A DNA stretch of 22,798 bases from Oopsacas minuta (Eukaryota; Animalia; Porifera), in contig JAKMXF010000103.1 of the NCBI GenBank assembly GCA_024704765.1, forward strand, positions 1-22,798. The letters run 5' to 3'. Below the pieces are notes generated by a model. It searched no databases, had not been told where the DNA came from, and saw only the letters and a list, made by a program, of their open reading frames with translations. Of the stretch, positions 1 through 22,686 are shown piece after piece. A program made the position numbers and the translations under genes. Position 1 is the first letter of the stretch, and every line of letters starts with the position of its first letter.

Positions 1-1047
1 AGTGCCTTCATTTTACTGCCTAGCTTCTATAATGTATCTTGTAATTGTTTTCTCTGCTCTACCTAAGTAAATTACTACAATATAATTTAAGAGCAGTTAT
101 AGAGTATATCAGAAATACAGAACAATTCTCAATAGGTTTATGTGGATTTCTATAAACCATAGCTTTCTAATACACTAAGCCAACGGCACCAACATTTTTC
201 TGGAACCAGGGATTGGTTAAACTAGTTTGGGATTATTATGCTGGAGTGTATATCTCAGAGACATTGCGCTTTGGGTCGAATGAATGTATCACACACTTGT
301 AGATATACATGTCATCATTCCATAAAAGCAAAAACTGTGTCAAAATATGCCAAATTATATATTTTGTAATCAATAATTCAGCGAATTATCAAAAAATGCT
401 CCATCTTTAATCCATGTAGAATGTTAAAAGATATTTGATTAAGATGTTGAAATATGAAATGTTCCAAAATCGTTTCTACACACAATATAAAAATTTTGTC
501 ATGATAAAGTTACCAAGTTTCTGAGTTATAGCACATGCCATTGCCTTAGTGAATTAGAATGCAGGCAGGTCAGGAAATTGCCCGAATCCTCACAAATTTT
601 GCTTCCTTAGTATAATTCAAAAAATTCGGCTATCAAACACAACGATTATTTCATCGAGGCTTACGGTATAATTATACAGATTCTATTGTATTCTTATTCT
701 GACATATATAACTCGAACAAGTTACGAAATACAATTCCTATAATTAACAAAACACAAAAATGTTCTCAGAGATTAGTTTGTTGGTAACTTTATTGGATTA
801 ATTACATAATATTACCTATTATACTTCTTGTTTATTTGGTTATTTGATATTTAAGCCCTAATATGACCAGAAATGCCATTATCAATTACACTTGGACGTT
901 GTGGATGCGAGTTAGGGTAGTTTCCTGGCTGAAAGATAGCGGAGAAATCTGTACAAGTATATTTGGGATATTTATAGGAGAAATGAGGAATTTAGTTTTC
1001 AATTTAGATAAATTCTAGTTCTATAAAACACGCTTTCAGCTCCAAAG

Positions 1048-1828: not shown

Positions 1829-2074
1829 GTAGGAATAGGGATTGTAGGAACAGTCAAGTAAACTGGTCTCATTACCATAACAGCCAAAGTCGAGTAGATT
1901 AGTTAGCATCAGGGTCATAATAGGCAATAGTACTTTCGATGACTGAAGAATAGCCTAATGCCTGACATGTGACTGTAGCATCTGCATCATCCCAGCCATC
2001 GTCACAGATATAGCCCCATGCACTGTTGTAATAAATATCAACTATAGCCCTACACTTGTCACAAAGCCATTAAG
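1829..2074 (-). pseudogene. Frameshifted scavenger receptor cysteine-rich (SRCR) domain remnant
   Basis: The minus strand reads LNGFVTSVG / IVDIYYNSAWGYICDDGWDDADATVTCQALGYSSVIESTIAYYDPDAN / NLLDFGCYGNETSLLDCSYNPYSY, with frame changes near 2046-2047 and 1901. These are classic SRCR motifs (WG.ICDD.W, VTC..LG, C.G.E.SL..C). The C-terminal cysteines are missing. Confidence 0.8.
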
Positions 2075-2362: not shown

Positions 2363-5300
2363 CTACAAAAGACAGTTCAAATAATTAAATACTAATAGAA
2401 CAGTGGAGTTTCCATTAATTTTTGATGGCTATGACATTTAAGAGAAATTGACTCTAGTAAAACATATTTCTGAAAGTAGAAAATTATCATCGAATTGAAT
2501 GCCAAAAATTCGATACTACTTATTTGAAGAATTATTCTGATAACATAACTAATACTTTTATCTCAAAGTGCTTTATCAAAAATCCTGCAGATTTTACGCA
2601 GTGATGTTACTTTTTAAACTCATGAATTGACAGTTATTTGACACACTGCATAATAGGGTCACCTCCTATCTGGTTATTCGACTAAATTACCGGATAATTT
2701 TACACTATTTATGTTGTATTTAATTTCTCCGGGTTAATATGGTTGCTTCGGGCCAATTGATCTGATTAACAGATGGCTCTATTAATTAATTAAGCAGAGT
2801 ATACTGTAATTGATAATTCAGTAAATGTGTCATGAACATACTCTCATCAGGTAGAGTATTTTGCTTTACAAAAATATAGTAATTATAATCTTGATTTATC
2901 AATAAAAAAATCGGCGAACGAAATTAACTAACCATGATATAATGTATTTTTTTGCATTTCACTGTCTCCAGATCTTGATTTCTTCTTAATCTTGTATTTT
3001 AAAGTGCCACTCTTCACTCTGCTTGAAATAGTATTAGATGTAGTTTGAGTGTTTCTTTTCCTTTTAAATATCGCTCTAACTTCCGCATTTCCTAACGTAA
3101 CCACAATAAAGAATATAAGGCCCATACCTCCATTCAATAGGATGAATATCCATTCTACAACTGTGCTCCGTATGAATATGTTGAATATTAGAATCACCCA
3201 AGGTAATCCTAAGATTGGTGTTAGAATTAAACTGTATATTAATACATTCTTTATTAACCCAAGCCTTTGATCTTCTCCTGCCTTAGCTCTAGCTGTTACA
3301 ATCCGTACAACAGCGAGAATGAGTAGTATAAGATTGATGAGGAGAAGGATAATTATAGGGGAAATAAACGCCCATATAACTCCATAGTTAATATTGAGGA
3401 AACAGTGCTCACTGGGGTCTACGTAGTTTTCTCTTGTTACAGCAATTGTTATTATTGGAATAACCAAAGGGAACGTCCATCCGAACACGATGAGATACGG
3501 GTAGATCTTCCTCGTGGTCATTACAGCTGTTTCAAAAGAAATATTAGTAAATAATGGTATCACAATCAACAAAATTGTATTATATTTCTCATACAGTCAA
3601 CTCCCGTTATATCGAAGCTCAAGAGAGCACGATATTTCCTTTGATACTGAGTTCGATATTAACCGATGATATTTATGTTACTTTGAAGATTTGTGACTAT
3701 ATTTCTACAAGTTAGATTTAGAATAGAGCGGATAGCTCGATGTAACGGGAGTGACTGTATTTAATCTCAAATTTTTCTTCAAGATTGTTTAGATGACCCA
3801 GAAAGAATTACATTAGAAATGGAACAATAAATCCGATTGGGTCTGTTCACTCTTTTGAACAAAAATTTGCTGTAACAGGGACTAAGGAGCAATTATTATA
3901 TAATTATATATAACATGGAAGCGTACAATGTATCTTCCCATATACTATTATATATTCTACGTAATCAACTCACCTATAACCAGTTTGAAAATTATGAAAA
4001 TTCCATTACACAGAGTCCAAGTGAACACTGCTAACCAAATATAGTGCAATAAGAATCCAATGATTAAACAAACAAAGTCATTATGAGTCCCACTCTCTAT
4101 TCCGAGCAGGAACAGTCCTGTAGCTAGCAGCATTGACAGACAGTAGTTGAAATAGATTATGTTTGCTTCCACTTTGAAAAATGGCTTTCCAGCTATGAAG
4201 AATAGAATCAAAGAGATTAGCAAGAAGATGAATGAAATGCTGACAAGCAGGTAGCTGAATATGGAGATGACCAACTCTTCAGTTTCACTAGTTGGAATAT
4301 CGTGGGGTGTAACAAATACCGCGAAACTAGTGAAGTGTGAAGTACTACAGATTGTTAAATTCTCATCGGGAACAGAGGTTGTTTGAATACCATCACTATT
4401 CCATATTGATCCATTCAATGCAACACATATGGATTCTAAATTAGCAGTAAACTTTGTGTAGAATGCTATCTCTGCCTAAAGATAAATAGAATTATAAATT
4501 CACGAACAGTTAACCAAATTTTCTCGTATAAGATTGAGATACAATTTTTCAATAACGAATACACAGTATACAAAGTTTGGTAATAAACTTACATCTTCAG
4601 ATAACTCGATTCTCCCGTATACATTACTTTCCTCTTGAAGAGTTTCAATTATAAGAATGTCGCTAGCCTGTGAAGACATACCTTCTCCAGGGTCTACTGG
4701 TTGATTACTATCTCTATTTATTAGGGTTGTTGCAACCTAAAATGTAGAAAAAGATATTCAAACTAGACATAATTTAACTACGAAAATTAAGTTGTTTTCA
4801 AGAAATAAATCAATATTATTAAATCTCAATTGTTGTTTGTCTGTTTGTTTGTCCTTTGAATAGCTCGAGGCGCAATGTGCCGAGTTCATCGCGAAGCGAC
4901 GAGCCAAAGGCTCGTTTCGTTAATATTCCTATTGGTCAGACCAGTACACAAAATTTGCAATATTTCCATATATGGAAATTCAGTTACAAGGAGCTGAACT
5001 CATTTAAGATTATAATATTTCTGAATCATTTACCGCTATATTTCCATCAACTGCGAGTTGTTGTGCCACGGACTGAGGAATTGAGAATTGAGTGTTGAAT
5101 TCTGTACTTGAGTTGACAATACCAGGAAAAACATAACTAGACTGTGATTCTGTCACACTTCTGGCCTGAACAACTATAGTCACAGTCCTTGACTCAATAA
5201 CTTGTATACCTGAATCAAGATCTCTCAGAATATTTTGACTGATATTTTGGATTGAATTGATTGCAATCAGTTCAGGAGTATTAATGGATGCAACTGAATT

Positions 5301-8300
5301 GGACATTCCTTCAGGCTAGATAGTAACCATGCATAATTATTGCATTGAACATATGGGCGTAAGATTATTATATAATTATTTTAGAATTCTGATAATCACA
5401 TTTCAAATTCAATTTTGCATATTTACCTATCGTTTTGCCTGACAAATTTTGCAAAAATAGGCAGAATAAACCGATTTTCGAATGCATACACTGCACTATA
5501 CTAGAATGATTAGATGGATTAGATGGATTAGATGGATTATTTAGGATTAGAAAGTGAAAATTTAGTTAGGTAAATAGCATATGGTGGAATGTACGTAACT
5601 CACATCGATCATAGTAGTATTATTGCTGCTAGAATTAACCTCCAGACTCCTATCTATAATCCCCTCAGCTGCCTCCAATAGCGAAATGACAGTCTCCTCA
5701 TCTAGGGACATACCATTACTCAGTGATTTGTTAACTAGTAAGGCATACGTGCTAGCTACTTGTTCAAGCTGCTCTTCATCTTCAGCTGCACCTGAGAGCA
5801 ATGCTACAGCAGCAGAAGCAACTTGACTTTGGTCATTAGTAATTTCAGTTTGATTCATCAACTGAGTTGCAACGTCATCAATATCCATTACAGTAATACT
5901 CAAATTGAACCTAACAGAACGTACATCTCTACCAGCTGTATTCTCAGCAATGCAATAGAATATTCTATCATCTGATAATAGCTGATTTGTAACGGTTAAT
6001 ATGTGTGATGAAATATTCTCGAATTTAGAATTCGTCCAGTATATAGTTGTCAGTGATAGTTTTCCTTTTGACTCACAAATGAGAATATGTTCAAAGGTAA
6101 TATTGAATTCCACATCCAATGTTATGTTTTCTGAAGGCAGAATTATTGTTGGAAATACTAAAAGGAGAAAACTGAATCATTCTTTCCGATCTTGGAGGTT
6201 CGAAGTATATTCTAATTAATATTTTAACATTGTCAGTTCACTTACTTGCTGATGTTATTTCTGCTACTGGTAAACTCAGAAGTGAAAAATCTGCACTCGT
6301 TTGCTACAAAAGTATAAATATATTAATTGTTATTTGCAAAATGCCTGTTATAGATACAAGTAGATATATATGTCAGCTGACTGAACTGAAAAGGATACTA
6401 ATTATGGAAAAAGTGATTATTGCCACTCTCATGTTTGATGATAATCTTACCCAAATCGACCAAAATTGACAATATTCGATACTCACCATATCTTCATCTA
6501 AGAATAGAATATAATAGCTATAGGACACTGTTGTTCCAGGATTTAACGGTAGATTGGTATAGGTTATTCCATTGTAAGTTGTTTCTTCTCTTGATCCAAT
6601 GATAAATGAGAAATAGTCTCCTGGTTGATTGAATAACGAAGAACCAAGAGCTGCTTGAATACGAACTCTAGTAGATTTATCACCAGACCCGTATATAAAA
6701 CCATTAGTATCAGTGGTATTCGTATTGATAGCAGAAAATCTTTCTGTTGTAGTATATCCAGTAAATATTTCTGGATTGTTGTAGTCCGTGATAATATAGA
6801 TGACACTAGCATAACAAATATAATTATTCCAATACATATGGCCAGTATTCGAAAATCGTTATTTTGTGGTTTTCTGATTAGAGAAAGAATGAATCACCAG
6901 TGAGTGGAGAATACATATGAAGTTAACAATAATTGACGTGCTGTATTTCTAATTACAAATATTTTGTCAGGAAAGTTCATTAATATACAAAAATTGATTG
7001 CTATTATAAATTACGTACATAAAAGGGAAATATGGATTGATTGTATTGAATTACCAAAAAGGAAAATAACAAATGAAATGAAAATTCTTTATTAATGAAA
7101 TTCTGATTCACTATGTTTATATACGAATATTATACACGGATAGAACACGGATAGAACACGGATGGAACTCGGATGGAACTCGGATGGTAGCCATTCGGGA
7201 AACAAAAATAAGTAAGTATTAACCGAGTGCACGTCTTATCCGTGTTCTAGTGTATATGAGAACATATTTAATCGTTATAACATACCCTATGTTGGCTGTT
7301 ACAAATAGACTTTGTGTTGGCACAAATATTTCTACTGTGTATAGAGCTGGTTGAGTAGACTGAGTAGGAGTTGGTTCAACAGGTACTTCACTTGGAACTA
7401 TATTGCAATACAAGTATGGAATAATAATTATCATCAAGGAAAGTGAATATAACATACGGTACGTGAATTTCTCTTAATGAATATTCAATAAATAGAGAAT
7501 ACAACTTACCTAGTGGATATGTTGTATTAAAGATTGGTTGTGATCTGATACTAATTCCTTGTTGGGTGACTACATTTATACTGATTGAATATTCTGTATT
7601 TGGTAATAGGTTAGATATAATCTGTTCATACGGTCCTGAATTTCCATCAGCAAAGTATTGAATTTGTTGCTCTGTATCTCCAGGAATTTGGTAGAATATG
7701 TTAAAACTTTGTAGAGCTCCATTCAAAGTAGTGAAATCATTCTCAAATGAAACTAGTAGTGACATCTGAAGCGTTCCTATTGGTGCAGTTATTGGGATCA
7801 CTGTAATAACGATGGGAGGACCGGTAGGAGCTAGAATAGAGAATATAATTATAATACTTGTATACTATATTAGAATATACGTATAATAAATATGATACAC
7901 AAATATCTTGATAAGTAGTGAAATTCATTCGTTTAGACTGAACCAAGTATTTTATGACAAACCATTTGCAGCTAGAGTTGGAGGTATAATGGTAACGAAA
8001 GGTGTTCGCCCAAGAGCAGTCTGAATAGATACATTAACCTCGTACTCATAATTAGGGAGAAGATCATCTAGAGTAATACTATTATCGTCTATAGGGAATG
8101 TCATAAAGAGTTCAGGAGTCATATTTATAATCACACGATCGGATTGTCTTCTTCTTCTCATATCAGTTGGAAATACGCTGTCTTCAAATAGGAATCCTTG
8201 GTAAATACAGATATATTGAGTAGCTGGGGAATTTAGTACTGATACTGGAACAAAAGGGATAATTAGAGTTATACTTGTTGAAGTGGTTTGAATCATTACA

Positions 8301-11300
8301 TCATCAGGTGTAAATACTGGTACAGTAGGAGGAGAAACTAAAGAAAGGTTAACATAATGTAGTAAGTATAGTTAGATATGTTTACCCTGTATTTAATGAC
8401 AATAAATGCATTGGAGTATAGCTCTGACCTTGGCTGAACCAGAAGATCCGATTGTTTCAATGATCACCGTGTCAGTTCATTTTAGCGCGAATCCAACTTT
8501 CCACCCATGTACCCCCTGTTGTCGTTCGTGGAACACAAATTGCACTCATGTTGGACACAGTATAGTTTAGCCTTTGCACTAAACAACCAACCTGCTTCTG
8601 TCATGATATATCTGGTCTCACTCGAAGCACCTAAGCCAGCTCCATTTCCAACTCTTACACTAACTACATACATCGTTCCTTCGTCTACATTATCGAAACA
8701 TACCATAATGATAGTAGATTGGACACTATAGCAACTAGCATCATTTATATTACATGTTCTGTTACTGGGACCTGATATTTGAATACTCGATAAGTTTACA
8801 AAATATCTGTCAATTAAACCATTTTGATCAATTGCTGGTGGGTTGGTAAATCGTACACATATTTGTGTAGGATTATTACTTGATACAGTAAGAATATTTG
8901 GAGCAGCAGACACTAAAAGAATAAGAAAACACAATCAATTCTATGTATGTAAGTTTGTTTACTGTTTTGAATATGAAATAATGCATCCTTAGCATGCCAA
9001 TGTCACATTTGCTGACAAAGCCCTCTCATTGTGGCGTAAGATTTAAAAGGGCCTGAGTATGAGTAGTCTTAACATATTCAACAAACCTGCTTCATTAGTT
9101 AACTGCACTACTCCATCAGTATATTCACTTGTTCCTGCTACATTAATAGCTCTAACACCAATAGTATAATTATTATACTCTTGTAATCCAGTCAGATCAA
9201 CAGAAATTTGTGTTTCAGCTGGATAGTTTGAATTTGGTGCATTTACCATTACAAACTGAGTATTAGTATCAAATATCTCTCCTGTATAGCTGATATTATA
9301 CATGAGATCAGGTCCATTCTGATCTATTGCAGGAGGAGGATTAAATGTTACTCTAATAGATGTAGCACTCAATGTTACTGTCATTACGTTTTGAGGTGTT
9401 TCACTGGGAGCTATTTGGAATATAAACAAATAGTAGATAAAATTTTGCAAAACTCTGTTTTTCAAAGGGAAAAAGAATATATTATTGAAATTAAGAGCGA
9501 TTCAGAGAACCATCTCTTATACGAATATAGTCAGTAAATTTTACAGTGTATTATCACTATCCTGCACCCTTTTACATACAAGATTATTTCTTATACAAAG
9601 CAAAAGGACATTATTAGCAAATTGATTCACATCTCACCTGCGATATCTGCCAACTGCACTACTTCATCTGTGTATTCACTTGTTCCTGCTACATTAATAG
9701 CTCTAACACTAATAGTATAATTGTTATATTCTTGTAGTCCAGTTAGATTAACAGAAATTTGTGTAACAGCTGGATAGTTTGAATTTGGTGCATTTACCAT
9801 TACAAACTGAGGCTCAGTATCAAACATCTCTCCTGTATAGCTGATATTATACATCAGATCAGGTCCATTCTGATCTATTGCAGGAGGAGGATTAAATGTT
9901 ACTCTAATAGAATTAGCACTCAATGTTTCTGTCATTACGTTTTGAGGTGTTTCACTGGGAGCTATGGAGAATACAATTATAATTATATAGTTTATACTAT
10001 ACAGCTCCATGTGTATATATCACTGTTGAATTAGTGTATTAATTATACTGAATTAGATCAATTAATCTTACCTGCGATATCAGTTAACTGTACAATTCCA
10101 TTTGTGTATTCAGTTGTTCCTTCTACATTAATAGCTCTAACACTAATAGTATAATTGGTATATTCTTGTAATCCATTTAGATTAACAGAAATTTGTGTAT
10201 CAGCTGGATAGTTTGAATTTGGTGCATTTACCATTACAAACTGAGGATCAGTATCAAATATCTCTCCTGTATATCTGATATTATACATCAGATCAGGTCC
10301 ATTCTGATCTATTACAGGAGGAGGATTAAATGTTACTCTAATAGATGTAGCACTCAATGTTTCTGTCATTACGTTTTGAGGTGTTTCACTGGGAGCTATG
10401 AAAGAATGCATATAAATACTATTATATAGATAATGAACTCAGGACAGCGGTTACGGCCAGCCGGAACATGATCATTTTTGTAATGTGCATTCCTATACTA
10501 TTAGTAAAGTATCTGTGCTACGATACTAATAGGAAGCATATTAATAATATGGATTTCAAAGTGTTCATTATTTTCATCAAATTGATAAATTATACCGAAA
10601 GAGAACGATCAATCTTACCTGCGATATTAGTTAACTGTACAACTCCAAGTGAAAATTCACTCATTCCTTCATCATTAATAGCTCTAACACTGATAGAATA
10701 ATTGGTATATTCCTGTAATCCAGTTAGATTAACAGATATTGGTGCAGTAGCTGGATACGATATGGGATCTGAGAAAGATATATTATCAAACTGATTAGAA
10801 GTGTCGAATATCTCTCCTATGTATCTGATATTATACATAGTAATAGGTCCATTCTGATCTATCTCAGGAGGAGGATAAAACATTACTCCAACAGAATTAG
10901 CACTCAATGCTACTGTCATTACATTCTGAGCTGTATCACTGGGAGCTATAAATTAGAAATATTGAATAAATACAGATTAACTATTATGATAAATATTCTG
11001 TATTATAACTTACCAGCTGGGTCAGTTCTCAAATAAACAGGATCACTGAAAGGACTGAGTCCAACTAAATTTCTAACAGCGAAACTAACAGAATAGTTAA
11101 CAAATTCTTCTAGTGGTGATAAAATAGTAAATTTGAAGGTGGTATCATTTGTATTAGTAATAGGAACAGTGATTATCTGGCTTGTTTCTATATCTATTCC
11201 TTGTAATCTAATCTCAACTGACTCAAGTGCACCATTGTGTTCATCTATATCTGGTATCCTCCAAGTACTGTTTAATGCTGTGGAGTTTATTACAGTGATA

Positions 11301-14300
11301 GATATGTTAACTGGAGGGGAACTTGGAGCTAGAGAAAGGTATAGTATGAAGATATGAAAATATTATTAATTATGCGGGAAATTCCAAAAAAATCTAACTC
11401 CAAAACTACTCAAGTTAAAAGGGCTATTTTGGTGGAAGAATTGAATTCGAAAAGGAACAATCATTAATTGTTGTATTATTCATTTTCCTATACGATTAGG
11501 ATAGTTTGTATTTGTTTTAACTATTATCATAATCCCTCGCTAATCCAAACAGCAGTGTTCCTATTGTAAAATACATCGTCCGGGTTAGTGAATTTGTTCA
11601 GATATGCGAAATGCATTGATACAATACTATAGGATCTAGGAGTACATTTTTTCGAGAGTTGTACAAACGATTAAAAGTCTGCTAACACGTGTAATATATG
11701 TATTATAATATATTATGGATTGTTTGATTATTTTTAATAATTGAGATATTCTCAAACTTGTTGAGTATACTTGAGTATTCGTATTTAGAAATTTTGAAAA
11801 GAATTAAGCATTTTTGGTATTTCTCAATATTCAATCAAAGCTAAGAATTGATACTAACTGTATAACCTAGTCGTTTACAGGAATATGATTCTATGAATTT
11901 GATGCTAACCTGCAGCTTGAGTTGTGGCTCGTAAAGGGTCAGTGAATGGACCATCACCAACACTCGTGCTTGCTCGTAATATAAATATATAGCTTGTATC
12001 TTCATCTAACCCAGTCACATTGATACTGAGATTAGTTGGAGGAACTGTTATATTTCGAAGATCTGTATCTCTTTCAATACCAGAATATTCAATAAAGAAA
12101 TTCACTAATATTCCATTCTGATCAATAGCAGGAGGGCCAATCCATGACAGAAGTATAGCACGACCACTCTGAGCAGTAAAGTTCTGTGGTGGAGCACTTG
12201 GAGCTAGAATACGACACAATTGAAACTAATGAAATTTTCCTCAAAATATATCAAATCTTACTCACCAGCTTCATTTGTTCTTGCAAATACATCATCACTC
12301 TCTTCTCCATCTCCAATCATATTAACTGCTATAACAGTTATAGTATAGTTATTAAACTCTTGTAAGGTTGTTAAGTTCTCACATAGCATGCCAGTTAGAG
12401 GGTATACTACTGGTGATACAGTTATAGACACATTCTGAGGAGATATCTCAAATGGATTCCCTGAGTAGATTATGGTGAAAGAAGTTATTGGGCCATTTTG
12501 GTTGACAGCTGGTGGAGGACTGAAGCATACTTGTATTGCTGTAGAATTCAATGCCACAGCTGTTACGTTCTGAGGAGGTTCATCAGGAACTATATAATAG
12601 AGTTAATGATATTTCTAGTTTTGATGCTGTTGGATATATACATATGGTATGTGACTCAGCACAACTAATATTAGTTTAATGATATAACACTGTATTGAAT
12701 AGATTTATCATAATAGTGTTTGGTGATATTTCTGTGTCCCAAAATTATTATAATAAAGTACTTACAGAGATACTGTATACTACGAGACTGATGTAAGTTA
12801 CTAAGTAATACAACAACCAAAACATAACAAACCTGCTGCTGCTGTCCTAACTGTTATCATAGTAGCGGTTCCTTCACCAGCTCCATTATTAGCTCTTATT
12901 AACACGGTATAGTTGTCGAACTCTTCTAAATTATATATACACACAATACTTGATTCAGTTAGTGGATAAGGTGTGTTTACGTCTACAGTTATATTTACTT
13001 CAGCAGCATTGAATAACTCTCCTTGATATGTCACAGTATAATTACTGATTGGTCCATTCTGAGTGATGCTTGTTGGAGGATCGAATGTAACACAGAAAGA
13101 AGTAGAATTGATATTAACTTCCATTAAATTGAGAGGTGCAGCAGGTACTAATAGGGGGGAATGGATGAAAATTACAATATAAGAACATTCACTAAATTTC
13201 TCAAAGAATCCGCATTACCTGCTTGCAGAGTTCGTGCTGTAACAGGTGTACTGGAGTCACTAGATCCAGCTGAATTAACAGCCATAGCACTGACAGTATA
13301 ATTGTTATACTCTTCTAATCCCGTTAGGTTAGAAACAGTACATATCATGGATGCATATGAAAAAGAGTATATTAAAACTTCCATCTGAGTAGAAGTATCA
13401 AATGGATCTCCAGTGTATGAGACTGCATAGTTTGTGATTAAACCGTTTTGGTCGATAGGGGTAGGTGGACATACTGTAACCTCAATTACTTGAGAACTAA
13501 TTGTACGTAGGGTTACATTCGGTGCAGCAGCAGGAGCTAAGTAGAGAGAAATATACAAATATAACATTGATTATGGTGAGTTAGTTTTCACACTTTTAGG
13601 CTGTTAATGTATTTTATTTGTCACTTTATGAATACAAAGTTGGGCGGAGCCAAAATCAGCCAGGTGCGACCTCTAATATGGGAAAACAAAAAAGGATTCA
13701 GTTAGTACGTACATTTCTCCAAAACGGATTATCTATTCTTGAACAAATTGTATAAGATGATTCTTAGGAAAATACATCGATTAGTACATAGATTTTGTGC
13801 AATGAGTACGTCTTATCCGAGTTCTACTGTATATGTTATTTGTCAGAGAAATAATTTATGTAAAGCGGGGAATTCAAATGTAGATATTATCAATTACCTG
13901 CTTCAAGAGTTTCTATAACAATAAAGTTACTAACAGGACTTGATCCAGCAGAATTAATCAATACTACTGTTATAGTATAGTTATTGTATTCTTCTAAACC
14001 TGTTATATTGCTACATATTGATCCAGTCATTGGATAATCAGAAGATGTTGTAAGAATATTACCAGTTCTTGGATCTGTATCAAATGGAGATCCAATAAGA
14101 GTGATATCGAATGAAGTTATTAATCCATTCTGTGTATTTCCAGTAGTAAAATCAAAACAGACAGTAATTGTAGTAGCATCAATGGGTGAACTGGAAACAT
14201 TCTGAGGAGCAACAACAGGTGCTATATAGAATAATATTAAGTAAATCTTTAGAAAGTGCCTAGACTGGGGGTTTAACTTAACAAATCGAATATACTCACG

Positions 14301-17300
14301 ACAAAAGACTCGATGCATTTATTATGAGAAGTTTCCACATCATTCATGATTTAGAACACTTGTGGGTATTTTGACTTATTACAAAGTCTCTTTGAATATT
14401 TTTCTCTACAAAATAATATCTGATTTGACTAACCTGCTGCTTCTGTCATAACTGTTATCATTGCAGCAGCTCCTTCACCAGCTCCATTATTAGCTCTTAT
14501 TAACACAGTATAGTTGTTATACTCTTCTAAATTATATATACACACACTACTTGATTCAGTTAGTGGATAAGTTGTGTCTACGTCTACAGTTCTATTTACT
14601 ACAGTCATATTGAATAACTCTCCTTGATATGTCACAGTGTAATCACTGATTGGTCCATTCTGAGTGATGCTTGTAGGAGGATCGAATGTAACACAGAAAG
14701 AAGTAGAATTGATATTACCTTCCATTAAGTTGAGAGGTGCAACCGATACTATTTTGGGAAGAATAAGATGGTAATATACAAATATTTGAGAAACATTTAG
14801 AACAGTTCCTAAGGGTAATGACTATCCCACATTTTACAGAAACAATGCTAGTCCTATATCGAGGAAGCTATGAGCCATCCCACTTTTCATGGGCTTCCGA
14901 TGCAGCTATGGTCATTATAGAGGTTTGTCTTATCGGAATGGATGATATGCGACGTCAGTATATTTATCCAAAAATTTTATCATCAATATCCCCGAATGCA
15001 AAGCACTTTAGATACATACCTGCTTGGAGAGTTTCTGATTGAGTAGAATCACTAACAGGACTTGATCCAGCAGAATTAATCAATACTACTGTTATAGTAT
15101 AGTTATTGTATTCTTCTAAACCTGTTATATTGCTACATATTGATCCTGTCATTGGATAATCAAAAGATGTTGTAAGAATATTATCAGTTCTTGGAACTAT
15201 ATCAAATGGAGATCCAACAAGAGTGACATTGAATGAAGTTATTAATCCATTCTGTGTATTTCCAGCAGGAAAATCAAAACAAACATTAATTGAAGTAGCA
15301 CTGATGGGTGAACTGGTAACATTCTGAGGAGCAACAACAGGTGCTAGAATAAATAAATGGGAAACGATTGAAAGGATATATTTGAAATTTTCATACTGAA
15401 GATTAGGAATAAATGGAAGCATGAAATATGCATACCAAGGTGTATACGGTATGCAGACTTTTCAGATGAATACAAAAAACTGAATTTCAAATTTCGTTTT
15501 GCTACTTGTAAAACAGCAAAATTATCACACGTTAATCCTTGAAAATTTTCATTCATGGACAATTCGCTAATGAATACTTAATATTTCGCCTCAAATCACT
15601 ACTTTATGCATCGCAGCACTATTCAGTAACCTACCTGCTTCATTAGTCATTACTACTATACTCTGACTGATAGGTCCTGGTCCTTGAGAATTAATAGCAA
15701 ATACTGTGATATTATAGTTATTGTATTCTTCTAAGTTAGTTAAATTGAAACACACATTACTCTCCAATGGATAAGAAGGAGGTGATATAACCATTTCATT
15801 AGTGATAGATTCTGTTTGGTATGGAGATCCAAAAGATGTGATAGTGAATGAAGTTATTATTCCATTCTGATTAATACCAGGAGGAGGATCGAAACAGACA
15901 TTAATTGAAGTAGGAGTTATGTTTATACCAGCAATGTTTTGAGGAGCTTCATTAGGAACTAGTAGGGGGAAAATTATGAATAATGGTTATATACAGATAG
16001 ATAGATTAAAGATACTGTAAATTATACTAGAATGATTAAATAGCTTAGAGAATTTCTCTGAATACAAACTTGCTTCTGATGTCATAACTGTAATCATAGC
16101 AGCAGCTCCTTCACCAGCTCCATTATTAGCACTTATTAACACAGTATAGTTGTTATACTCTTCCAAATTAGATATACACACAATACTTGATTCAGTTAGT
16201 GGATAAGTTGTGTTGACGTCTACAGTTATATTTACTACAGTCATATTGAATAACTCTCCTTGATATGTCACAGAGTAATCACTGATTGGTCCATTCTGAG
16301 TGATGCTTGCAGGAGGATCGAATGTGACACAGAAAGAAGTAGAATCAATATTAGCTTTCATTAAGTTGAGAGGTGCAGCAGGTACTAGTAGAATATAATA
16401 TATTTTATTACATAGGGATACCAACTCTCACGGATTCGTGGTTCTAGCGGTAAATCTCATTTATTTTTGCTTTCTTAATTCATATGTTATATAATTGGGA
16501 TAGCTCACCTGCTTCCAATGTTTCATTCCTTACTTCAGCTATCATGGAGTCACTCACCCCTAATTCAGGAATAGTCACCATTAATGATATCGTATAGTTA
16601 ACATACTCTTGTAAGCCCGTTATGTCTACATCTTGTGGTGTACAAAGTCCTGTTTGTTCGGTAATATTGATATTTAGAGTACGAACAGTTGTATCAAGCT
16701 CTACACCTCTGTATACAAATTCATATCGTATTGTTACATCAGCTCCACAGTATTCAAGTGCTCTGAAAGATACTCTTATCGCTGTTGAGTTTATTGTATT
16801 AGCTACCAAATCCTCATCACCTACATATGTTATTAATGTATTTAATAATTCAAATATTTTACTACACAAATTCAATTCTCTAATTAATCTATTATTATAA
16901 CGCTATGTTACTGCTTGCATGGATTTAAATCTTTCGAATTTCAGCTCATTTCCCAAAATGTGAAAATTTTATGACTGAACTAGTAAAAATGCTATTAAGA
17001 TAATAATCGCCAATAATTATCATTACCTATTGCTATGGTATCAACAGCTCTCGGACCGAAGTTTGATTCGAAAATAGAAGCTGACACTCTGATGATAAAC
17101 ACATCATCTGTTGATAGAGTAAGTTGTTGAAAAGTAGAATAATTTGTTAATGTTTGTATATTGATGAGATTTCTGAGAGTACGATAAGTGAGTTGATATT
17201 CCAGACCTTGTGGAAATACTTCAATTGGATATATTCCTGCTGATTGTGTCCATGTAAAGTTGTATACACTACCAGAATCAATGACAGAACTCAAGTTCTG

Positions 17301-19632
17301 TGGCACTCCAGCTATAGAATATATTATACATCAAAGTTGTTTAGTTTACAACCTAGTATGAACCATGAGTTAACTTCTGCGGGAGAGAATTTCCCTAACC
17401 GAAGTAACGTTCGAACGGTCGCTAATTTAGCAAACATAAACTTACGAAGAGGAGGATTAGTTGCTATCAGTAAGAATTCTAAAGTAACATCAGAAGTCAA
17501 TGTTCCATCAGTTAACGTTAGTGTAACAGTTAGTGTTGTATTAAGAGTTTGATTAAGGATGGACGTTGTAATCGTTATTATCCCGTCTATGTCCACTGCA
17601 AACAAATCGTCTGTGGAAGACACCGAATAAGTAACTACAGCATCTTCTTCACCATCACTCAAAGCTGGTACACACCAAACAGTATTATTAGCAGGAGTAT
17701 CAACGGGTAGATCTATGTTGTATGTAGATTGAGAGAGAGTAGGCGCTGTGTCTTCAATATTGTTGATATAGATAATTAAGGTACCCAGTGTAGTAAGGGG
17801 ATCCGAAGTGGTTACTATTGAGAATGATAGCTCAGTCGTGGTTTCATAGTCAAGTGATGAATTTAGATAGAGTTCGCCAGTGCTGTTATCGATTCTGATA
17901 GCTGTAGGTGTCGGAGATAGATCTATTGTAGTACCACTTACAGTTATTGTACCGATAAGTGTGTCAACAGCGGAATTTTCATCTATTGTGAATACGTATC
18001 TGTCTTGTTCGAGAATATTTGCTATTTGTGTAGGATAAACATAAGTATCATTCATAATAATAGTTTAAGGGGAACTTACATGAATTTTCTGTAATAGTTA
18101 GAACAAACGTAGTAGTTGAAGTTAAACTAGTAGATCCTCCGTCATAAGCTTCTATACCTACACTATAGTCACCTAGAGGTAGAGGATCAGTGTTCTCTAA
18201 AACACCAGCTGAAGTCAAACTGAAATTAGCTGCATTTGTGCTGTTACTATCTATCTTAAACATTACCAAACCGTTTGCATTAGAATCTGCATCTGTTGAA
18301 TTAAACCTAACAATTGTGTTATTAACAGACAGTTCTGTGGTATTAATCTCTATAGTGAGGGAATCCGGGCTAGGTGGAGTGGGTATGTTATCATTCAAGT
18401 CAATCAAACAAATATTTATCTCAGCAGCTTCCAAACTTGAAGTATCAGTTATGACAGTTGTGTCTCTACGTTGATCAACATTTTCGTAATCAAGTATGTT
18501 TACTTGTAGATAAACAGGACCCGGAATCGCAACTTGAAAGTTTGGATTTGAAGAGACGGGTGATGTGTTAGTAGTAACGTATACAGGTCCAATAGTATTT
18601 ATAGAGTCCTCACTGATGGCAAAATAGTATTGATTTGGGGTAAACGCAAGATCTATTGAGAAACAGTTTGGTAAAAATACAGCAGATTAGCCAACGTGCA
18701 AACTCTAACAGTAAGCTCGATTAGTTATTAGAATTCTCATTTGATGGTAGAGATTTATATTGAGCAAACATTAATTAATTTTGAGGGTATATAGCCTAGT
18801 TAAATGGTTAGCGAATTCATTTTGTTGCTATAATAATCTGGTTTAGTTGTTGTATTGAATTATTTATTACTTATTACAGTGGATGCCGGTTATGAGAATA
18901 CTTCATATAAACGCATTTGGATGTAGGAGCCATATTATAGAAAAAGATTCTCAGATATACTGTATACCGGTAATAAGAACCAATTTTACTACTATTCTAA
19001 GAGTGTTCTTATAACCGTCATGATATTATATTGGGTATATGGCAACCGTTTTCCAGTTTGATGTTTTATATCCTATAAAAAATCCATGGAGTATAATACA
19101 TGATTCCGTGAATCAAGTAAAAACCCTGTAAAAGTCTATTAAGAATAAATATTAGTCAACAAATTTTGAGAAGAGGCTATCAGACAGTAATATAGTTTCT
19201 AACATTGAAATTCTACAAATTGCAAACCGAGTTGTTCATACCATTACCATAGCTATTATTACTCAACACAAAAGGCTGGTTAAATTAAGTACAATGGAAA
19301 CTGCCTATTAGTAATTCGTAGCAAAATGAGCCTTTTAACAACTTTTTTTCATGGACATGGAGTGGTTTTGTTTGGTAATTACTGTGCATAATATCAAAAT
19401 TCGCTTATTAGCAAGGAAACTCTTGCAAAATACGATTTGCTAATAGGCGGTTTCCATTATACACCCTAATATGAGTAATAAGCACATACCTTGTGAATGG
19501 TTGAATATACAACTAGCTAATAGCACCTATAATTGAAAACAACAGTAAATTATATATTATTGGAAGAATAGAGATGAGACTTACAATCAGTGTTATTGAG
19601 ATCCGCGTGAGTTTAAGGAAGTTAAATATCAT
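2211..19632 (-). CDS. Giant adhesion-class GPCR (4x cadherin, 19x FN3, RPTP-like module, Ig, GAIN/GPS, 7TM); 32 coding exons, ~3,343 aa
   Basis: Manual exon model, transcript order: 19585-19632, 19490-19526, 18080-18652, 17446-18021, 17027-17311, 16509-16820, 16070-16384, 15635-15958, 15020-15343, 14434-14748, 13898-14221, 13219-13536, 12833-13147, 12266-12589, 11910-12203, 11014-11328, 10619-10945, 10072-10395, 9638-9961, 9087-9410, 8592-8912, 7963-8337, 7510-7830, 7286-7397, 6487-6805, 6246-6303, 5604-6157, 5034-5315, 4593-4736, 3974-4475, 2933-3526, 2211-2362. All 31 introns are GT-AG and all phases match, giving 10,032 nt in one open frame from ATG to TAA. No transcript evidence is available. 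Confidence 0.9.
2933..4280 (-). CDS. aGPCR exons 30-31: secretin/adhesion-type 7TM domain
   Basis: Seven hydrophobic segments with family motifs: TM3 C..I..LLHY..LA.F.W, TM4 GW..P, ECL2 Cys, TM5 F..P...L.IN, TM6 P.LGL.W, TM7 LN...G..FF. The 447-nt phase-1 intron is at 3527-3973. Confidence 0.92.
3594..3757. mobile_element. pogo/Tigger-like MITE in aGPCR intron 30
   Basis: TA-cagtcaactcccgttatatcga ... tcgatgtaacgggagtgactg-TA: TIRs differ by one indel and one mismatch. Confidence 0.85.
4310..5315 (-). CDS. aGPCR exons 28-30 (part): GAIN domain with GPS motif and tethered (Stachel) peptide
   Basis: ICVALNGSIWNSDGIQ...TICSTSHF/TSFAVFV matches the C-x-W-x-G-x-C-x-H(L/F)/T(S)-x-FAVL GPS consensus. 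His-Phe-Thr lies at 4337-4329. Confidence 0.9.
4831..4979. mobile_element. Possible Helentron-associated/DINE-1-like non-autonomous element remnant
   Basis: A (TGTT/TGTC)n tract at 4831-4853, a GC-rich hairpin acgagcc-aaa-ggctcgt at 4899-4915, and a perfect 18-bp palindrome at 4962-4979. Ends and target site are not defined. Confidence 0.3.
5508..5539. repeat. 9-bp minisatellite (GATTAGATG) x3.5 in intron 27
   Basis: Read directly from the sequence. Confidence 0.85.
5604..6157 (-). CDS. aGPCR exon 27: Ig-like (I-set type) domain followed by the helical start of the GAIN domain
   Basis: Ig motifs LICESKG, IYW and D..FYCIAENTAG, followed by amphipathic helices (DVATQLMNQ...LLEAAEGIIDR). Confidence 0.85.
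6246..7397 (-). CDS. aGPCR exons 24-26: Pro/Thr linker plus an RPTP-like membrane-proximal beta module
   Basis: The spliced frame reads VPSEVPVEPTPTQSTQP...VTANIG|VIYIITD...FIIGSREETTYNGITYTNLPLNPGTTVSYSYY...EDM|QTSADFSLLSLPVAEITSA. The F.IG...Y.G..Y.N.PL.P motif resembles the juxtamembrane module of receptor tyrosine phosphatase ectodomains (recognised by eye). Confidence 0.65.
7135..7252. mobile_element. Short TA-flanked MITE with an internal 11-bp tandem array
   Basis: TA-cacggatagaacacggata ... tatccgtgttctagtg-TA. About five 11-bp units (acacggataga grading to actcggatgga) lie at 7134-7187. Confidence 0.6.
7510..17311 (-). CDS. aGPCR exons 5-23: 19 tandem fibronectin type III repeats, one per phase-1/phase-1 exon
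   Basis: Most exons start (A/V)P..(A/P)P.N and carry QNG.I..Y and the FN3 tyrosine corner L(E/Q)E(Y/F).NY.(I/V).V.A.N..G.G. Exon lengths are 285-375 nt, all multiples of 3. Exon 16 (11014-11328, APSSPPVNIS...LEEFVNYSVSFAVRNLVG) is absent from the ORF track but translates cleanly. Confidence 0.92.
13680..13829. mobile_element. Partial MITE related to the 7135-7252 element (right end only)
   Basis: gagtacgtcttatccgagttctactg-TAtatg (13804-13835) aligns with gagtgcacgtcttatccgtgttctagtg-TAtatg (7225-7258). Both are preceded by ggga(a)aacaaaaa. The left TIR was not found. Confidence 0.55.
17446..18652 (-). CDS. aGPCR exons 3-4: four cadherin-like repeats, two per exon
   Basis: Cadherin motifs: ISED...LDYE...DLNDNIP; DADSNANG...AYDGG; IDEN...LDYE...NIEDTAP; a degenerate fourth repeat (SDGEED...LTDG). 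The exons are 573 and 576 nt, separated by a 58-nt intron. Confidence 0.85.
18877..19027. mobile_element. Degenerate pogo/Tigger-like MITE in aGPCR intron 2
   Basis: TA-cagtggatgccggttatgagaata ... tgttcttataaccgtcat. The inner part of the TIR matches at ~15/18 and the right terminus is decayed. Confidence 0.5.
19292..19459. mobile_element. pogo/Tigger-like MITE in aGPCR intron 2
   Basis: TA-caatggaaactgcctattagtaa ... ttgctaataggcggtttccatta-TA: TIRs match at 20/23. An internal cgcttattagcaa sub-repeat is present. Confidence 0.75.
19490..19632 (-). CDS. aGPCR exons 1-2: signal peptide (MIFNFLKLTRISITLI|VLLASCIFNHSQ)
   Basis: ATG at 19632. A 58-nt GTAAGT...TATAG phase-0 intron is followed by a 37-nt exon ending at a GTATGT phase-1 donor, which joins in frame to exon 3 (D-LAFTPNQYYF). 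The peptide has a basic N-region and a hydrophobic core. Confidence 0.7.
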
Positions 19633-21272
19633 TATAATATTTTAATGAAATTGGACGCATTAATTGTATTTAAAGGAAAATCAGGTTACATTCCTAATTG
19701 TAATAGGACATACTAACCTGTATTAGATTTCATAGAAAATGGATACTGTTACATTATTATGGGAAGTGTAATCCTAAAAATGATTAGAGATTTGAATTTG
19801 CGATTCAGCAGTTATTATATCCGATCCTTTTAGTTGTATTTTTCATAAATAACTTAACATTTCGTTGAGGATCACCAGCTACCAGTTAGGAAATGTAAGT
19901 TTACTTTTAGGTAATTCCAGCTAAATGTAGGAAAGAGTTTGTCTAACGAGCGATGACCGTTCCGAACGAACACCTTTGCTAGCATTAGTTTAAAGGTGAC
20001 CTTTTCGGATTTTTGAAAAAGAAATACGCTGTACTTTTTGTGGTTTTATTCTAAGTTGTTTATTACGCGAATAACGTATAATATGTATACGTTATCTATT
20101 TGAACGTATTATACGTCTAGGTTAACCTCGAAATATCAGATCTTGACATTGTTAGACTTGTTTAACTCACATAATTATCAAGTATTATATAATTTAGTCA
20201 ATTGTAAGGAGATTTCTCATTAATAATTCAAGAACTACTGTTTTGATACAAAATAATTATTGCATAAATCAGCCTAGTAGAAATTACGTCACCAAAAATT
20301 GAGATTGAACATATAATACAGATTATTCAATTTAGGTTTTATTCAACCACAAAAACCACGTTTCTAAGTGAAATCTTCATCTCTGTGAAAAGGTGACCAA
20401 ATGTTCTATCTCATGCTAAATGTATTTGGAAATAGTGACACTAGATTGAGGAATCGACAAGAGATACAAACTTGAAATTCGGCATGTGTATAGATTGTGA
20501 ATAATCTAGCTTGATATTCTATTATCTAAGCGATTTCTCATTAACTCTCTGAGTTAGGTGTCATAATGTATTGACTTATCAGATAAGGGAACGGCTTGTC
20601 ATACAATAAACCAGTGATTCTCAATGTGTGAGCCTCAGAAAGTGGTTTAGTGTCAATAGCATAAAACAAATTTGTCAAAATACATTCAGAAGCTCAGCTT
20701 CGAGTTCTTTGTATATGAAAGTAGTAAAAGTCAAGATGAATAATTACGTAACTTCTTAACACAAATATTTACAGATAAATTGTCTAGCTTTGAAGACTAG
20801 AATTATCACAAAAAGATTATGTATACCCAATTACTCACTAACTAGAGTAGTCGTTGAAGCAAATCAATATCATTAATTAAGGAATTGATGCAAAGGTGTG
20901 AAAATTTAACATTAGAAATATTCATAAACAGGCTCAAATCTCCAAATAAATAAATGTAATAATCAGCTGGTAGATTCCGCAGGATTGCAAAGACGTATGA
21001 TAGACGTTAGAACGTCCTACATTATCCATTCCCTCAAGGAATCTCTTTATAGGAGCTGTGTATGAATGGATTAGAATAGAATAACAATAATAAGTATGAA
21101 TAATTAACAATAGCTATAACAGAAGATAGAATGAAAATGTTTTGTACATACGTACGTAAATCTAATGAAATAATAAATAGAGTTCTAGGATATCTCTATG
21201 TCTTAGCCAAGTATTGAAGGGAAGAATTGTATAAAAAGGAAAAGGCAAGAATTTGAATAAAAGCCCCAATAA

Positions 21273-22499
21273 CTAGAATATGAGAAAACGATTGTTGTAA
21301 CCTACAACCACAATTCTTCCTGTTGAATTGAGGGTAACTCCAGTAGGTCGTGGAATTGATTGAGTGAGTTTATGAAGTAATTGTCCTGTATTATCAAATA
21401 TAATAACAATATTACTGTTGTGATTCGAAATAATGAAATTACCAGCTCCATCTATCAGGAATGAACTCGGATTATTCAAATGTTTGTTAATAGAATCACA
21501 TACAGTGTTCTGTACTTGATTAAAATTATAGTTGAAAGAGTAGAGAAAGGAATTTTGGCCAGACAATACAAATATAGTATCTTTAGTCAGTTGTATGTCT
21601 TCTGGATATTTGACTATACCAATTCCAAACTGAGATTTGTAAGAATAATCTTGTGAGAATATTTGTATTCTGTTGTTAGAGTAATCACATACATAAATAT
21701 CTCCATTATCTACATTGATAGCAATACCATAAGGTCTGTTGAATTGTCCTTCTCCACTACCTGGAGTACCTATTTGTTTGATAAAATTTCCTTTCAAATC
21801 AAATATCAACAAACAACCTGCTTCATACTGACTCACAAATACTCTCTCTTTATCAATAGTAATACAGAGAGGAGACTTCATCTTATCAGTACCAAATAGA
21901 AACAAGAATTTACCATCTTTACTGAATACCTGTACTCTGTTGTTACATTGATCTGCTACATAGATGTTATCTGTTCTGTAATCAACAGCAACTCCCCATG
22001 GATTCCTGAATTGTCCTTCACCACTACCTCCAGTACCTACACTCACTACTGGTTTCACTTTACCTTTATAATCTACAACTGGTAGACATGAGTAACTTGA
22101 ATTAACAACACTAATCTTACCAAATCCATTAATCATATCTAATAGTGTATTATCAAATTCAAATGAAATATGTTTGGGTTTCCATTCAGATTCTATTTCT
22201 TTCTGTTTCTGTTCTAGGATTTTCATCATTTCAGTTTGAGTTCCTTTCATTGTGGTTGATTCGATATTTTCTCCAATAAACTTCTGAGTTTTTGTAATTT
22301 CGTATATACATTGTTTATGTTTGTCATTTTCCTGTTTGTAATTTTTGTGAATTTCTTCCAATTCCCTCAAAAGTTGGTTCTTCCTCTTTTCCAAATAATT
22401 TGTTATTTCACAAAATTTGTCATCAATTTGACGTTTTATTCGACTTATTTGAAGTTCAAAGCTATCTTCTACTCCAGGAGAAGTTGGAGCAGTAGCCAT
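21273..22499 (-). CDS. Coiled-coil + six-bladed NHL-repeat protein (TRIM-NHL-like, no RING or B-box in this ORF), 408 aa
   Basis: Uninterrupted ORF. The N-terminal third is a charged heptad-rich helix. Six NHL blades follow (FRNPWGVAVD, MKSPLCITID, FNRPYGIAIN, VKYPEDIQLT, LNNPSSFLID, IPRPTGVTLN), with G.GEGQF and D..NNR(V/I)Q(V/I)F signatures. Confidence 0.92.
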   Translation of the reverse strand: MATAPTSPGVEDSFELQISRIKRQIDDKFCEITNYLEKRKNQLLRELEEIHKNYKQENDKHKQCIYEITKTQKFIGENIESTTMKGTQTEMMKILEQKQKEIESEWKPKHISFEFDNTLLDMINGFGKISVVNSSYSCLPVVDYKGKVKPVVSVGTGGSGEGQFRNPWGVAVDYRTDNIYVADQCNNRVQVFSKDGKFLFLFGTDKMKSPLCITIDKERVFVSQYEAGCLLIFDLKGNFIKQIGTPGSGEGQFNRPYGIAINVDNGDIYVCDYSNNRIQIFSQDYSYKSQFGIGIVKYPEDIQLTKDTIFVLSGQNSFLYSFNYNFNQVQNTVCDSINKHLNNPSSFLIDGAGNFIISNHNSNIVIIFDNTGQLLHKLTQSIPRPTGVTLNSTGRIVVVGYNNRFLIF

Positions 22500-22686
22500 T
22501 CTATAAATAATATAAAATTATAATATCTGATAGTATGATAAGTTAACAGGAATTATATTGTTACTATATTAGTGTTGCTGGATTTCCCCGGAAATAGGAT
22601 ACGAGTCATACGACGATATAGCAAGAAGACATCACTAACACTAATCAATTTATACTTCACTCCCAAAGAATACGAATATTAAATGG

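What the first reader, a model, noticed from the sequence alone, without database searches (positions are those of the whole stretch)
7510..18652. 21 consecutive frame-neutral cassette exons: a possible length- and identity-tunable receptor
Seen: exons 3-23 all start and end in phase 1, and all lengths are multiples of 3. Each of the 19 FN3 exons encodes exactly one domain. No skip combination creates a junction stop: only exon 3 ends in T, and no downstream exon starts AA, AG or GA. Weak-looking donors (GTTTGT at exons 7, 13, 20, 22; GTTGGT at 21) are interspersed with consensus ones. Established: phase-1 symmetry is the normal signature of exon-shuffled extracellular modules, so it does not prove alternative splicing. 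Inference: skipping or unequal crossover could produce many rod lengths and repeat orders, as in Dscam-type or allorecognition-type diversification, but wired to a GPCR.
Basis: partly seen in the sequence, partly recalled or inferred. Interest (0 to 1): 0.75.

Follow-up and report, generated by a model that had tools for sequence, protein, structure and literature searches.

The report
Duplicated FN3 exon array, sponge receptor
A glass-sponge adhesion receptor gene really does have 21 consecutive frame-neutral exons, but they look like the leftover of exon duplication and DNA exchange between neighbouring genes, which is ordinary for this genome, and nothing shows that they are spliced in and out.

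Summary
On the minus strand, exons 3-23 (18652-7510) all start and end in phase 1. The genome is the glass sponge Oopsacas minuta.

The frame neutrality is the expected signature of class 1-1 modules. The absence of junction stops is trivial, because 18 of 21 exons end in G.

No evidence for cassette splicing was found, and none could be sought: no transcript data were reachable. The odd donors are conserved in paralogous copies and are used constitutively in an annotated paralogue model. No Dscam-like intron pairing exists. Published data put exon skipping low in sponges.

- Contig C34 carries exons 21-23 plus six, not three, exon-18/19/20-type units, joined to a single-pass membrane tail (KAI6660282.1).
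- C195 has an extra exon pair in a different order.
- C101 joins the same GAIN/7TM core to a C-type lectin head.

These copies are probably paralogues, but the assembly is fragmented. The scan has noted the same pattern at other loci of this genome. Verdict: a new member of a known kind, of modest interest.

The parts
18080..18652 (-). exon 3, cadherin, 573 nt, phase 1-1, ends in T
17446..18021 (-). exon 4, cadherin (FAT4-like N-terminal cadherin), 576 nt, phase 1-1
17027..17311 (-). exon 5, 285 nt, phase 1-1; all-beta, but its FN3 identity is not shown
16509..16820 (-). exon 6, divergent FN3, 312 nt, phase 1-1
16070..16384 (-). exon 7, FN3 class A (with ex10 and ex13), donor gtttgt
15635..15958 (-). 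exon 8, FN3 class B
15020..15343 (-). exon 9, FN3 class C (with ex11)
14434..14748 (-). exon 10, FN3 class A, donor gttagt
13898..14221 (-). exon 11, FN3 class C
13219..13536 (-). exon 12, FN3
12833..13147 (-). exon 13, FN3 class A, donor gtttgt
12266..12589 (-). exon 14, FN3
11910..12203 (-). exon 15, FN3, donor gttagc
11014..11328 (-). exon 16, FN3
10619..10945 (-). exon 17, FN3, 78-80% identical to ex18-20
9087..10395 (-). exons 18 (10395-10072), 19 (9961-9638) and 20 (9410-9087): three FN3 exons 92-94% identical in nucleotides, separated by introns that do not align with each other; the ex20 donor is gtttgt
8592..8912 (-). exon 21, FN3, donor gttggt
7963..8337 (-). exon 22, FN3-like with an insert carrying RRRR, donor gtttgt
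7510..7830 (-). exon 23, FN3, last of the phase 1-1 run; homology to contig C34 ends 81 nt into the following intron (window 7429)
3960..4475 (-). open stretch holding the exon with the GPS motif (H-F|T, then TSFAVFV) and TM1-3
2931..3596 (-). open stretch holding the last exon: TM3/4-7 of 7tm_2 and the C-terminal tail
5565..6176 (-). first stalk exon of the core shared with contig C101 (93-98%); homology starts 14 nt before its acceptor at 6157
19516..19641 (-). probable exon 1 (hydrophobic, signal-peptide-like open stretch)
   Evidence: reading of the sequence only

Best explanation
This is one gene of Oopsacas minuta for a giant adhesion GPCR. It encodes cadherin repeats, a rod of about 19 FN3-type domains, a stalk, GAIN/GPS and a 7tm_2 core. 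The rod was built by repeated tandem duplication of a one-domain exon flanked by phase-1 introns, so the 21 frame-neutral exons are a historical by-product (class 1-1 modules). The array is still being remodelled at the DNA level. Recombination between the similar exons adds, removes and reorders units. Exon sequences are kept alike while the introns between them have diverged. Whole exon blocks are shared with neighbouring genes that have other membrane anchors. Rod length and composition are therefore tuned over evolutionary time by rearrangement, not, as far as can be shown, by splicing. Inferred, not shown: the protein works like other adhesion GPCRs, with the long rod transmitting binding or pulling to the GAIN domain and exposing the tethered peptide after the H-F|T site.
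For: The exon model, phases and open frames come. Domain assignments come, and the GPS and 7TM alignment to ADGRL3/ADGRD1. Paralogous exon classes in the window (18/19/20; 7/10/13; 9/11) have dS of only 0.08-0.18. Yet their similarity stops within 2-25 nt of the exon ends, and the intervening introns do not align. C34 holds ex21-23 at 96-99% plus six units of the ex18-20 type. Their introns are homologous to window introns 18 and 19, which means recent block duplication, and the exon types are mosaic. That block is annotated as KAI6660282.1, 1206 aa, with one TM helix and no GPS or 7tm_2. C195 reads ex4,5,6,A,B,A,B...,A,C against the window's A,B,C,A,C,D,A. C101 joins a C-type lectin exon to the same stalk/GAIN/7TM at 93-98%, with the break 14 nt before an acceptor. 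An exon of the window stalk (6376-6858) recurs at 95% beside two PTP domains on C34. Genome-wide, about 86 of 150 scored fn3 matches lie in short open frames. One locus, C22:420.7-480.8 kb, has at least 43 on one strand. A precedent for phase-1 bias read as exon shuffling in sponges is 154 of 155 phase-1 introns in the Amphimedon aggregation-factor genes (PMC5400394).
Against: No transcript evidence for this gene could be obtained, so the exon model and its constitutive use rest on sequence alone and on an annotated paralogue. The comparison contigs are short pieces of a hybrid SPAdes/SSPACE assembly made from several individuals (PMC10280926). Some junctions or copy numbers could therefore be assembly errors, and some contigs could be divergent alleles. 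The window's own annotated protein was not found. Exon-limited similarity could partly reflect selection on synonymous sites rather than gene conversion.
Confidence: 0.75

Rival explanations
1. Regulated cassette-exon skipping, tenascin-C style: subsets of the FN3 exons are left out in some cells or stages, giving receptors of different rod length and composition.
For: Every subset of exons 3-23 keeps the frame and creates no stop. Seven of 21 donors have T at +3. Frame-preserving skipped exons are enriched even in sponges (PMC6142364). Tenascin-C shows that nine FN3 repeats can be alternatively spliced (PMC4422809).
Against: No transcript shows it. The odd donors are conserved in the C34 and C195 copies and are used for adjacent joins in KAI6660282.1. 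Introns are 58-581 nt and do not resemble one another. Exon-skipping frequency is low in poriferans. Frame neutrality is fully explained by exon duplication.
Confidence: 0.12
2. Copy-number alleles: C195, C292 and possibly C34 are alternative haplotypes of this locus in the sampled individuals, so rod length is polymorphic in the population, as at allorecognition-type loci.
For: The DNA came from several adults brooding embryos. The variant contigs are short and unplaced and differ in unit number and order. pN/pS is fairly high, 0.57-0.74. Hexactinellids show allorecognition but lack aggregation-factor genes (PMC5400394).
Against: Synonymous divergence of 4-10% is large for alleles of a cave population that the authors expect to have low heterozygosity. 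C34's block sits in a differently built, separately annotated gene. C123 shows tandem NHL/receptor units, which means true paralogues. pN/pS is below 1.
Confidence: 0.15
3. Assembly artefact: the window contig, or the contigs compared with it, are chimeras formed at shared FN3 repeats, so the differences in copy number and the 'shared blocks' are not biological.
For: The hybrid short-read/long-read assembly has k no larger than 99 and was scaffolded. Single-N joins cut C34, C195 and C123 exactly at array edges. C265 (1.3 kb) joins intron 4 to the intron before exon 4736 in an out-of-frame way.
Against: The copies differ by 2-8% all along, and the six C34 units differ from each other by 5-27 of 324 nt, so they are distinct sequences and not stutter. 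The window contig has no N and keeps an open, phase-consistent array through all 21 exons 3-23.
Confidence: 0.1

Closest known systems
Class 1-1 exon-shuffled module arrays (Patthy); sponge example: Amphimedon aggregation-factor genes
   Same: One fold per exon or exon set, all flanking introns in phase 1, and expansion by duplication and shuffling. The AqAF genes have 154 of 155 introns in phase 1 (PMC5400394).
   Different: The modules here are FN3 rather than Calx-beta/Wreath. The protein is a 7TM receptor, not a secreted proteoglycan. High allelic polymorphism, shown for the AFs, is not shown here.
Tenascin-C alternatively spliced FN3 repeats
   Same: A run of similar FN3 repeats whose omission keeps the frame. 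Nine repeats give 511 theoretical isoforms (PMC4422809).
   Different: In tenascin-C the splicing is documented, and in a vertebrate with long introns. Here no isoform is known, introns are 58-581 nt, and the carrier is a GPCR.
Dscam1 exon clusters
   Same: Tandem arrays of paralogous exons for Ig-superfamily-like folds.
   Different: Dscam uses mutually exclusive choice of one exon per cluster, guided by docking and selector intron pairing. Here every exon is a whole extra domain, and no intron pairing elements were found.
CELSR/Flamingo (ADGRC) and other adhesion GPCRs
   Same: Cadherin repeats at the tip, a GAIN/GPS region and a 7tm_2 core. The 7TM is closest to ADGRD1, ADGRE and ADGRL among solved structures.
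   Different: There is no EGF or laminin-G, but a rod of about 19 FN3 domains. I know of no FN3 rod of this kind in a vertebrate adhesion GPCR (own knowledge). fn3 is listed among the domains found in Amphimedon adhesion GPCRs (PMC4302439).
CTLD-(FN3)n-Ig-GAIN-7TM receptor cluster noted elsewhere in this genome (scan note s1-226616)
   Same: An FN3 stalk of variable length on an adhesion-GPCR core, with repeat exons kept alike by DNA exchange. Contig C101 shows a lectin head on the same core as this gene.
   Different: This gene has a cadherin head, and part of its rod is shared with a single-pass 'sidekick-like' gene.

Membership tests
Adhesion GPCR (class B2) | 7tm_2 seven-helix core | tested here: met
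   Pfam 7tm_2 scores 34 and 63 bits in two exons, covering profile positions 4-246 of 250. The best solved relatives are ADGRD1, ADGRE1/5 and ADGRL2/3.
Adhesion GPCR (class B2) | GPS motif directly before TM1, with the H-L|T/S cleavage triad and a tethered-agonist peptide | tested here: inconclusive
   Pfam GPS scores 26.5 bits against a cut-off of 22.5. The alignment to ADGRL3 puts CSTSHFTSFAVFV against CSCNHLTNFAVLM. His and Thr are kept, the residue before the cut is F instead of L, and one Cys is lost. Cleavage itself is untested.
Adhesion GPCR (class B2) | GAIN domain fold upstream of GPS | not tested
   The stalk exons 4503-6176 gave no Pfam match. The spliced stalk was not joined or folded.
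Class 1-1 exon-shuffled module array | Each module lies in one exon with phase-1 introns on both sides | tested here: met
   All 21 exons are 1-1. fn3 matches span profile positions 2-83 within single exons.
Class 1-1 exon-shuffled module array | The same modules occur in different gene contexts, or are duplicated in tandem | tested here: met
   Paralogous exon classes exist within the window. The ex18-23 block occurs in the single-pass gene KAI6660282.1. The core is shared with the lectin-headed C101.
Alternatively spliced FN3 cassette array (tenascin-C type) | Transcripts that join non-adjacent exons | not testable with these tools
Word searches with ex22 and with KAI6660282.1 residues 610-960 found no transcript-derived fragments.
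Alternatively spliced FN3 cassette array (tenascin-C type) | Cassette exons have weaker splice sites than constitutive ones | tested here: inconclusive
   Seven of 21 donors have T at +3. They are conserved in paralogues and used in the annotated paralogue model.
Dscam-type mutually exclusive exon cluster | Docking and selector complementary intron elements | tested here: not met
   Only short AT-rich inverted matches were found, 16-32 nt at 70-94%. The introns share no repeated element.
Allorecognition-type polymorphic receptor locus | High allelic polymorphism with an excess of amino-acid changes | tested here: inconclusive
   Only copies of unknown allelic status are available. Their pN/pS is 0.57-0.74 at pS 0.04-0.10. 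Population data are needed.

The most novel reading that the evidence does not exclude
The FN3 exon array is a diversity generator for self/non-self or partner recognition in glass sponges, which show allorecognition but lack the demosponge aggregation-factor genes. Unit number and identity would differ between individuals, or between transcripts, and would be read out through a GPCR core and through sister genes with single-pass and phosphatase tails.
Probability: 0.07. Interest if true: 0.8.

Novelty: new member of a known kind. Interest (0 to 1): 0.35.

Why it matters
If the contig comparisons hold, this locus shows exon shuffling in progress in an early-branching animal. The same six-exon FN3 block, about 96% identical introns included, sits in an adhesion GPCR and in a single-pass protein. 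The same GAIN/7TM core carries either a cadherin-FN3 rod or a lectin head, and the breaks lie in introns. That makes a textbook mechanism for building multidomain surface receptors directly observable. The idea that splicing tunes the receptor stays a hypothesis that existing RNA-seq data for this species could settle quickly.

Tried and rejected
1. A word search with exon 22 found no hit. A word search with KAI6660282.1 residues 610-960 returned only itself. So no transcript-derived fragment and no annotated product of the window gene was found; the expected product of about 3,700 aa is outside the length band those searches can reach.
I did not try another route.
4. AlphaFold2 on exon 5 alone gave pLDDT 50, too poor for a fold search.
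5. I first read the 40 hits as adhesion-GPCR paralogues. They all map to window 3591-3763, inside an intron, so they are a dispersed repeat.
6. A search for Dscam-like intron pairing was negative.
7. I considered an alternative exon model using the CAG about 20 nt inside each FN3 exon. I rejected it because it shifts the frame by 20 nt and disagrees with the annotated paralogue's junctions.
8. The spliced exons were never joined for a search or a fold.

Full report
**What is there**

The window is the whole 22,798-base contig C103 of a 61.46-Mb, 365-contig assembly. Those figures match the published Oopsacas minuta (glass sponge) genome (PMC10280926). A protein encoded on a sister contig is named as O. 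minuta in NCBI.

The gene lies on the minus strand. Exons 3-23 run from 18652 down to 7510. All 21 are open, have lengths that are multiples of 3 (285-576 nt), and start and end in phase 1. The introns are 58-581 nt, and each carries an in-frame stop if retained.

Downstream lie stalk exons, a GPS motif and a 7tm_2 core. The closest solved relatives are ADGRD1, ADGRE and ADGRL.

**Domain content**

Each exon was searched on its own by reference.

- Exons 3 and 4 are cadherin.
- Exons 7-21 and 23 pass Pfam's fn3 cut-off.
- Exon 6 is below the cut-off but matches a profile of the array's own FN3 exons (hhalign 97.6%).
- Exon 22 is a weak FN3 with an insert.
- Exon 5 is not recognisable. Its single-sequence AF2 model has seven strands but a pLDDT of only 50.

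So '19 FN3 exons' is 17 shown, one probable and one unproven.

**What is trivial and what is not**

Eighteen of the 21 exons end in G, and every FN3 exon begins with the last two bases of an Ala or Val codon. A stop needs T at the first position, so freedom from junction stops follows automatically.

A run of 22 phase-1 introns would be vanishingly unlikely for independent introns; phase 1 is 36% genome-wide in Amphimedon (PMC5400394). These exons, however, are copies of one another.

**Donors**

GTTTGT (exons 7, 13, 20, 22) and GTTGGT (exon 21) are confirmed. Exons 10 and 15 also have T at +3, so 7 of 21 donors do. The same donors are present in the copies on C34 and C195. The annotated protein of the C34 gene joins those exons to their immediate neighbours. 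They therefore behave as ordinary working donors. I could not measure genome-wide donor usage.

**History of the array**

- Self-comparison gives exon classes 18/19/20 (92-94% nucleotide identity), 7/10/13 (90-93%) and 9/11 (91.5%).
- Synonymous divergence within classes is only 0.08-0.18, with dN/dS of 0.4-1.3.
- Similarity stops 2-25 nt beyond the exon ends, and the introns between these exons do not align with each other.
- Between C103 and C34, by contrast, introns are as similar as exons: 95.8% over 2,974 bases.

The simplest reading is old duplications whose exons are still being homogenised by exchange, plus newer block duplications. This is an inference.

**Variant copies in the same assembly**

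- **C34:59043-63362** holds exons 23, 22 and 21 (96-99%), preceded by six units of the 18/19/20 type instead of three. Their introns are of window types 18 and 19, and the exon types are mosaic. The array is cut by a single N.
  - This block is annotated as KAI6660282.1 ('sidekick-1-like', 1206 aa). It continues into one more FN3, a single membrane helix and a tail, with no GPS or 7tm_2.
  - Homology with the window ends 81 nt into the intron after exon 23.
- **C195** reads exons 4, 5, 6, A, B, A, B, a 2.2-kb stretch, then A, C. The window order is A, B, C, A, C, D, A.
- **C101** has the window's stalk/GAIN/7TM at 93-98%, but upstream it has a C-type lectin exon. Homology starts 14 nt before the acceptor at 6157.
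- **A stalk exon of the window (6376-6858)** recurs at 95% at the end of C34, next to two tyrosine-phosphatase domains.
- **C123** shows tandem NHL-gene/receptor units.

Synonymous divergence between copies is 0.04-0.10 and pN/pS is 0.57-0.74. That level of divergence, and the different gene contexts, point to young paralogues rather than alleles.

**How common this is in the genome**

Of 150 scored fn3 matches, about 64 sit in giant open frames (765-3579 aa, many domains per exon). About 86 sit in short open frames. One locus, C22:420.7-480.8 kb, has at least 43 on one strand.

Earlier scan notes, which are unchecked AI leads, describe the same 'all phase 1-1 FN3 exons' at other loci. They also describe a lectin-FN3-GAIN-7TM cluster with DNA exchange. 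So the scan has met this pattern before on other DNA of this genome. Within this species it is ordinary.

**The splicing hypothesis**

I found nothing for it beyond the permissive frame.

- No Dscam-like complementary intron elements exist.
- Published comparative work finds exon-skipping frequency low in poriferans, though skipped exons in animals tend to preserve the frame (PMC6142364).
- Tenascin-C shows that such splicing of FN3 repeats is possible in principle (PMC4422809).

I put regulated skipping at about 0.12.

**How it most likely works**

- Shown: the gene encodes a cadherin tip, a long FN3 rod, a stalk, a GPS motif aligned to ADGRL3 (H-F|T followed by TSFAVFV) and a 7TM core.
- Inferred: it acts like other adhesion GPCRs, with the rod as spacer and force transmitter. 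Rod length changes by recombination between similar exons, and the phase-1 design lets every such product stay in frame.

**Caveats**

- The assembly is a hybrid short-read/long-read build from several adults with embryos, scaffolded afterwards.
- The comparison contigs are short, and three are cut by single-N joins at array edges. Copy numbers and some junctions need long reads.
- I could not fetch more genome sequence.
- I could not find the window gene's own annotated product.

**Verdict**

The DNA-level remodelling has support. Splicing is untested and not favoured. This is a new member of a known kind, of modest interest.

Noticed in passing
window 7510-18652 (all 21 acceptors); also 6157, 4736, 4475: Every acceptor inferred in this gene ends in TAG, never CAG (21 of 21 in the array, and the three checked downstream). 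The same holds for the copies on C34 and C195. It may be a genome-wide preference of this AT-rich sponge.
   Followed up: partly
window 7963-8337 (exon 22): The FN3-like exon 22 has an insert with RRRR followed by QS, a furin-type site. Basic runs of the same kind (RKRR, RRRR, RRRKR) occur at the same place in five short ORFs from other assemblies (P0003-P0007, 48-54% identical). This recalls the cleavage insert in an FN3 domain of the insulin receptor (own knowledge).
   Followed up: partly
window 3591-3763 (intron between the two 7TM exons): A segment of about 170 nt is a dispersed repeat. The first-look search found 629 candidates in the genome; 40 were scored, at 72-81% identity.
   Followed up: no
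window 16115, 14479, 12878 (class A exons); 9129 and 9680 (exons 20 and 19): Donor-like GTGAAG or GTGAAT sites lie in phase 1, 42-45 nt upstream of the real donors, and are conserved in the C34 and C195 copies. Using them would remove the last beta strand in frame. They may simply be the codons for G-E-G and S-E-Y.
   Followed up: no
G000 contig C265 (L011, 1337 b): This small contig joins exon 4 plus 72 nt of intron 4 to the intron before exon 4736 and the GPS exon, skipping all FN3 and stalk exons. The phases (1 and 0) do not match, so it is a broken copy or an assembly chimera.
   Followed up: partly
C34:52978-53823 (+) and C34:57807-58652 (-): The last exon of KAI6660282.1 (FN3, TM helix and tail) is present twice in inverted orientation about 4 kb apart, at about 91-96% amino-acid identity to the protein. 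An 87% copy of its tail also lies at C195:9527-9979.
   Followed up: no
window 21276-22517 (-): This is a single-exon NHL-repeat gene (414-aa open frame). At least nine other copies in the assembly are 85-94% identical in nucleotides, several of them next to copies of the receptor gene.
   Followed up: partly
window 1902-2069 (-): There is an SRCR-domain fragment (Pfam SRCR, 42 bits) downstream of the receptor gene. Window 563-973 recurs at 95% on C24, next to an 89% copy of exon 3.
   Followed up: no
window 3960-4475 (-): The GPS region has only two cysteines where ADGRL3 has four, and F instead of L before the predicted cut.
   Followed up: partly
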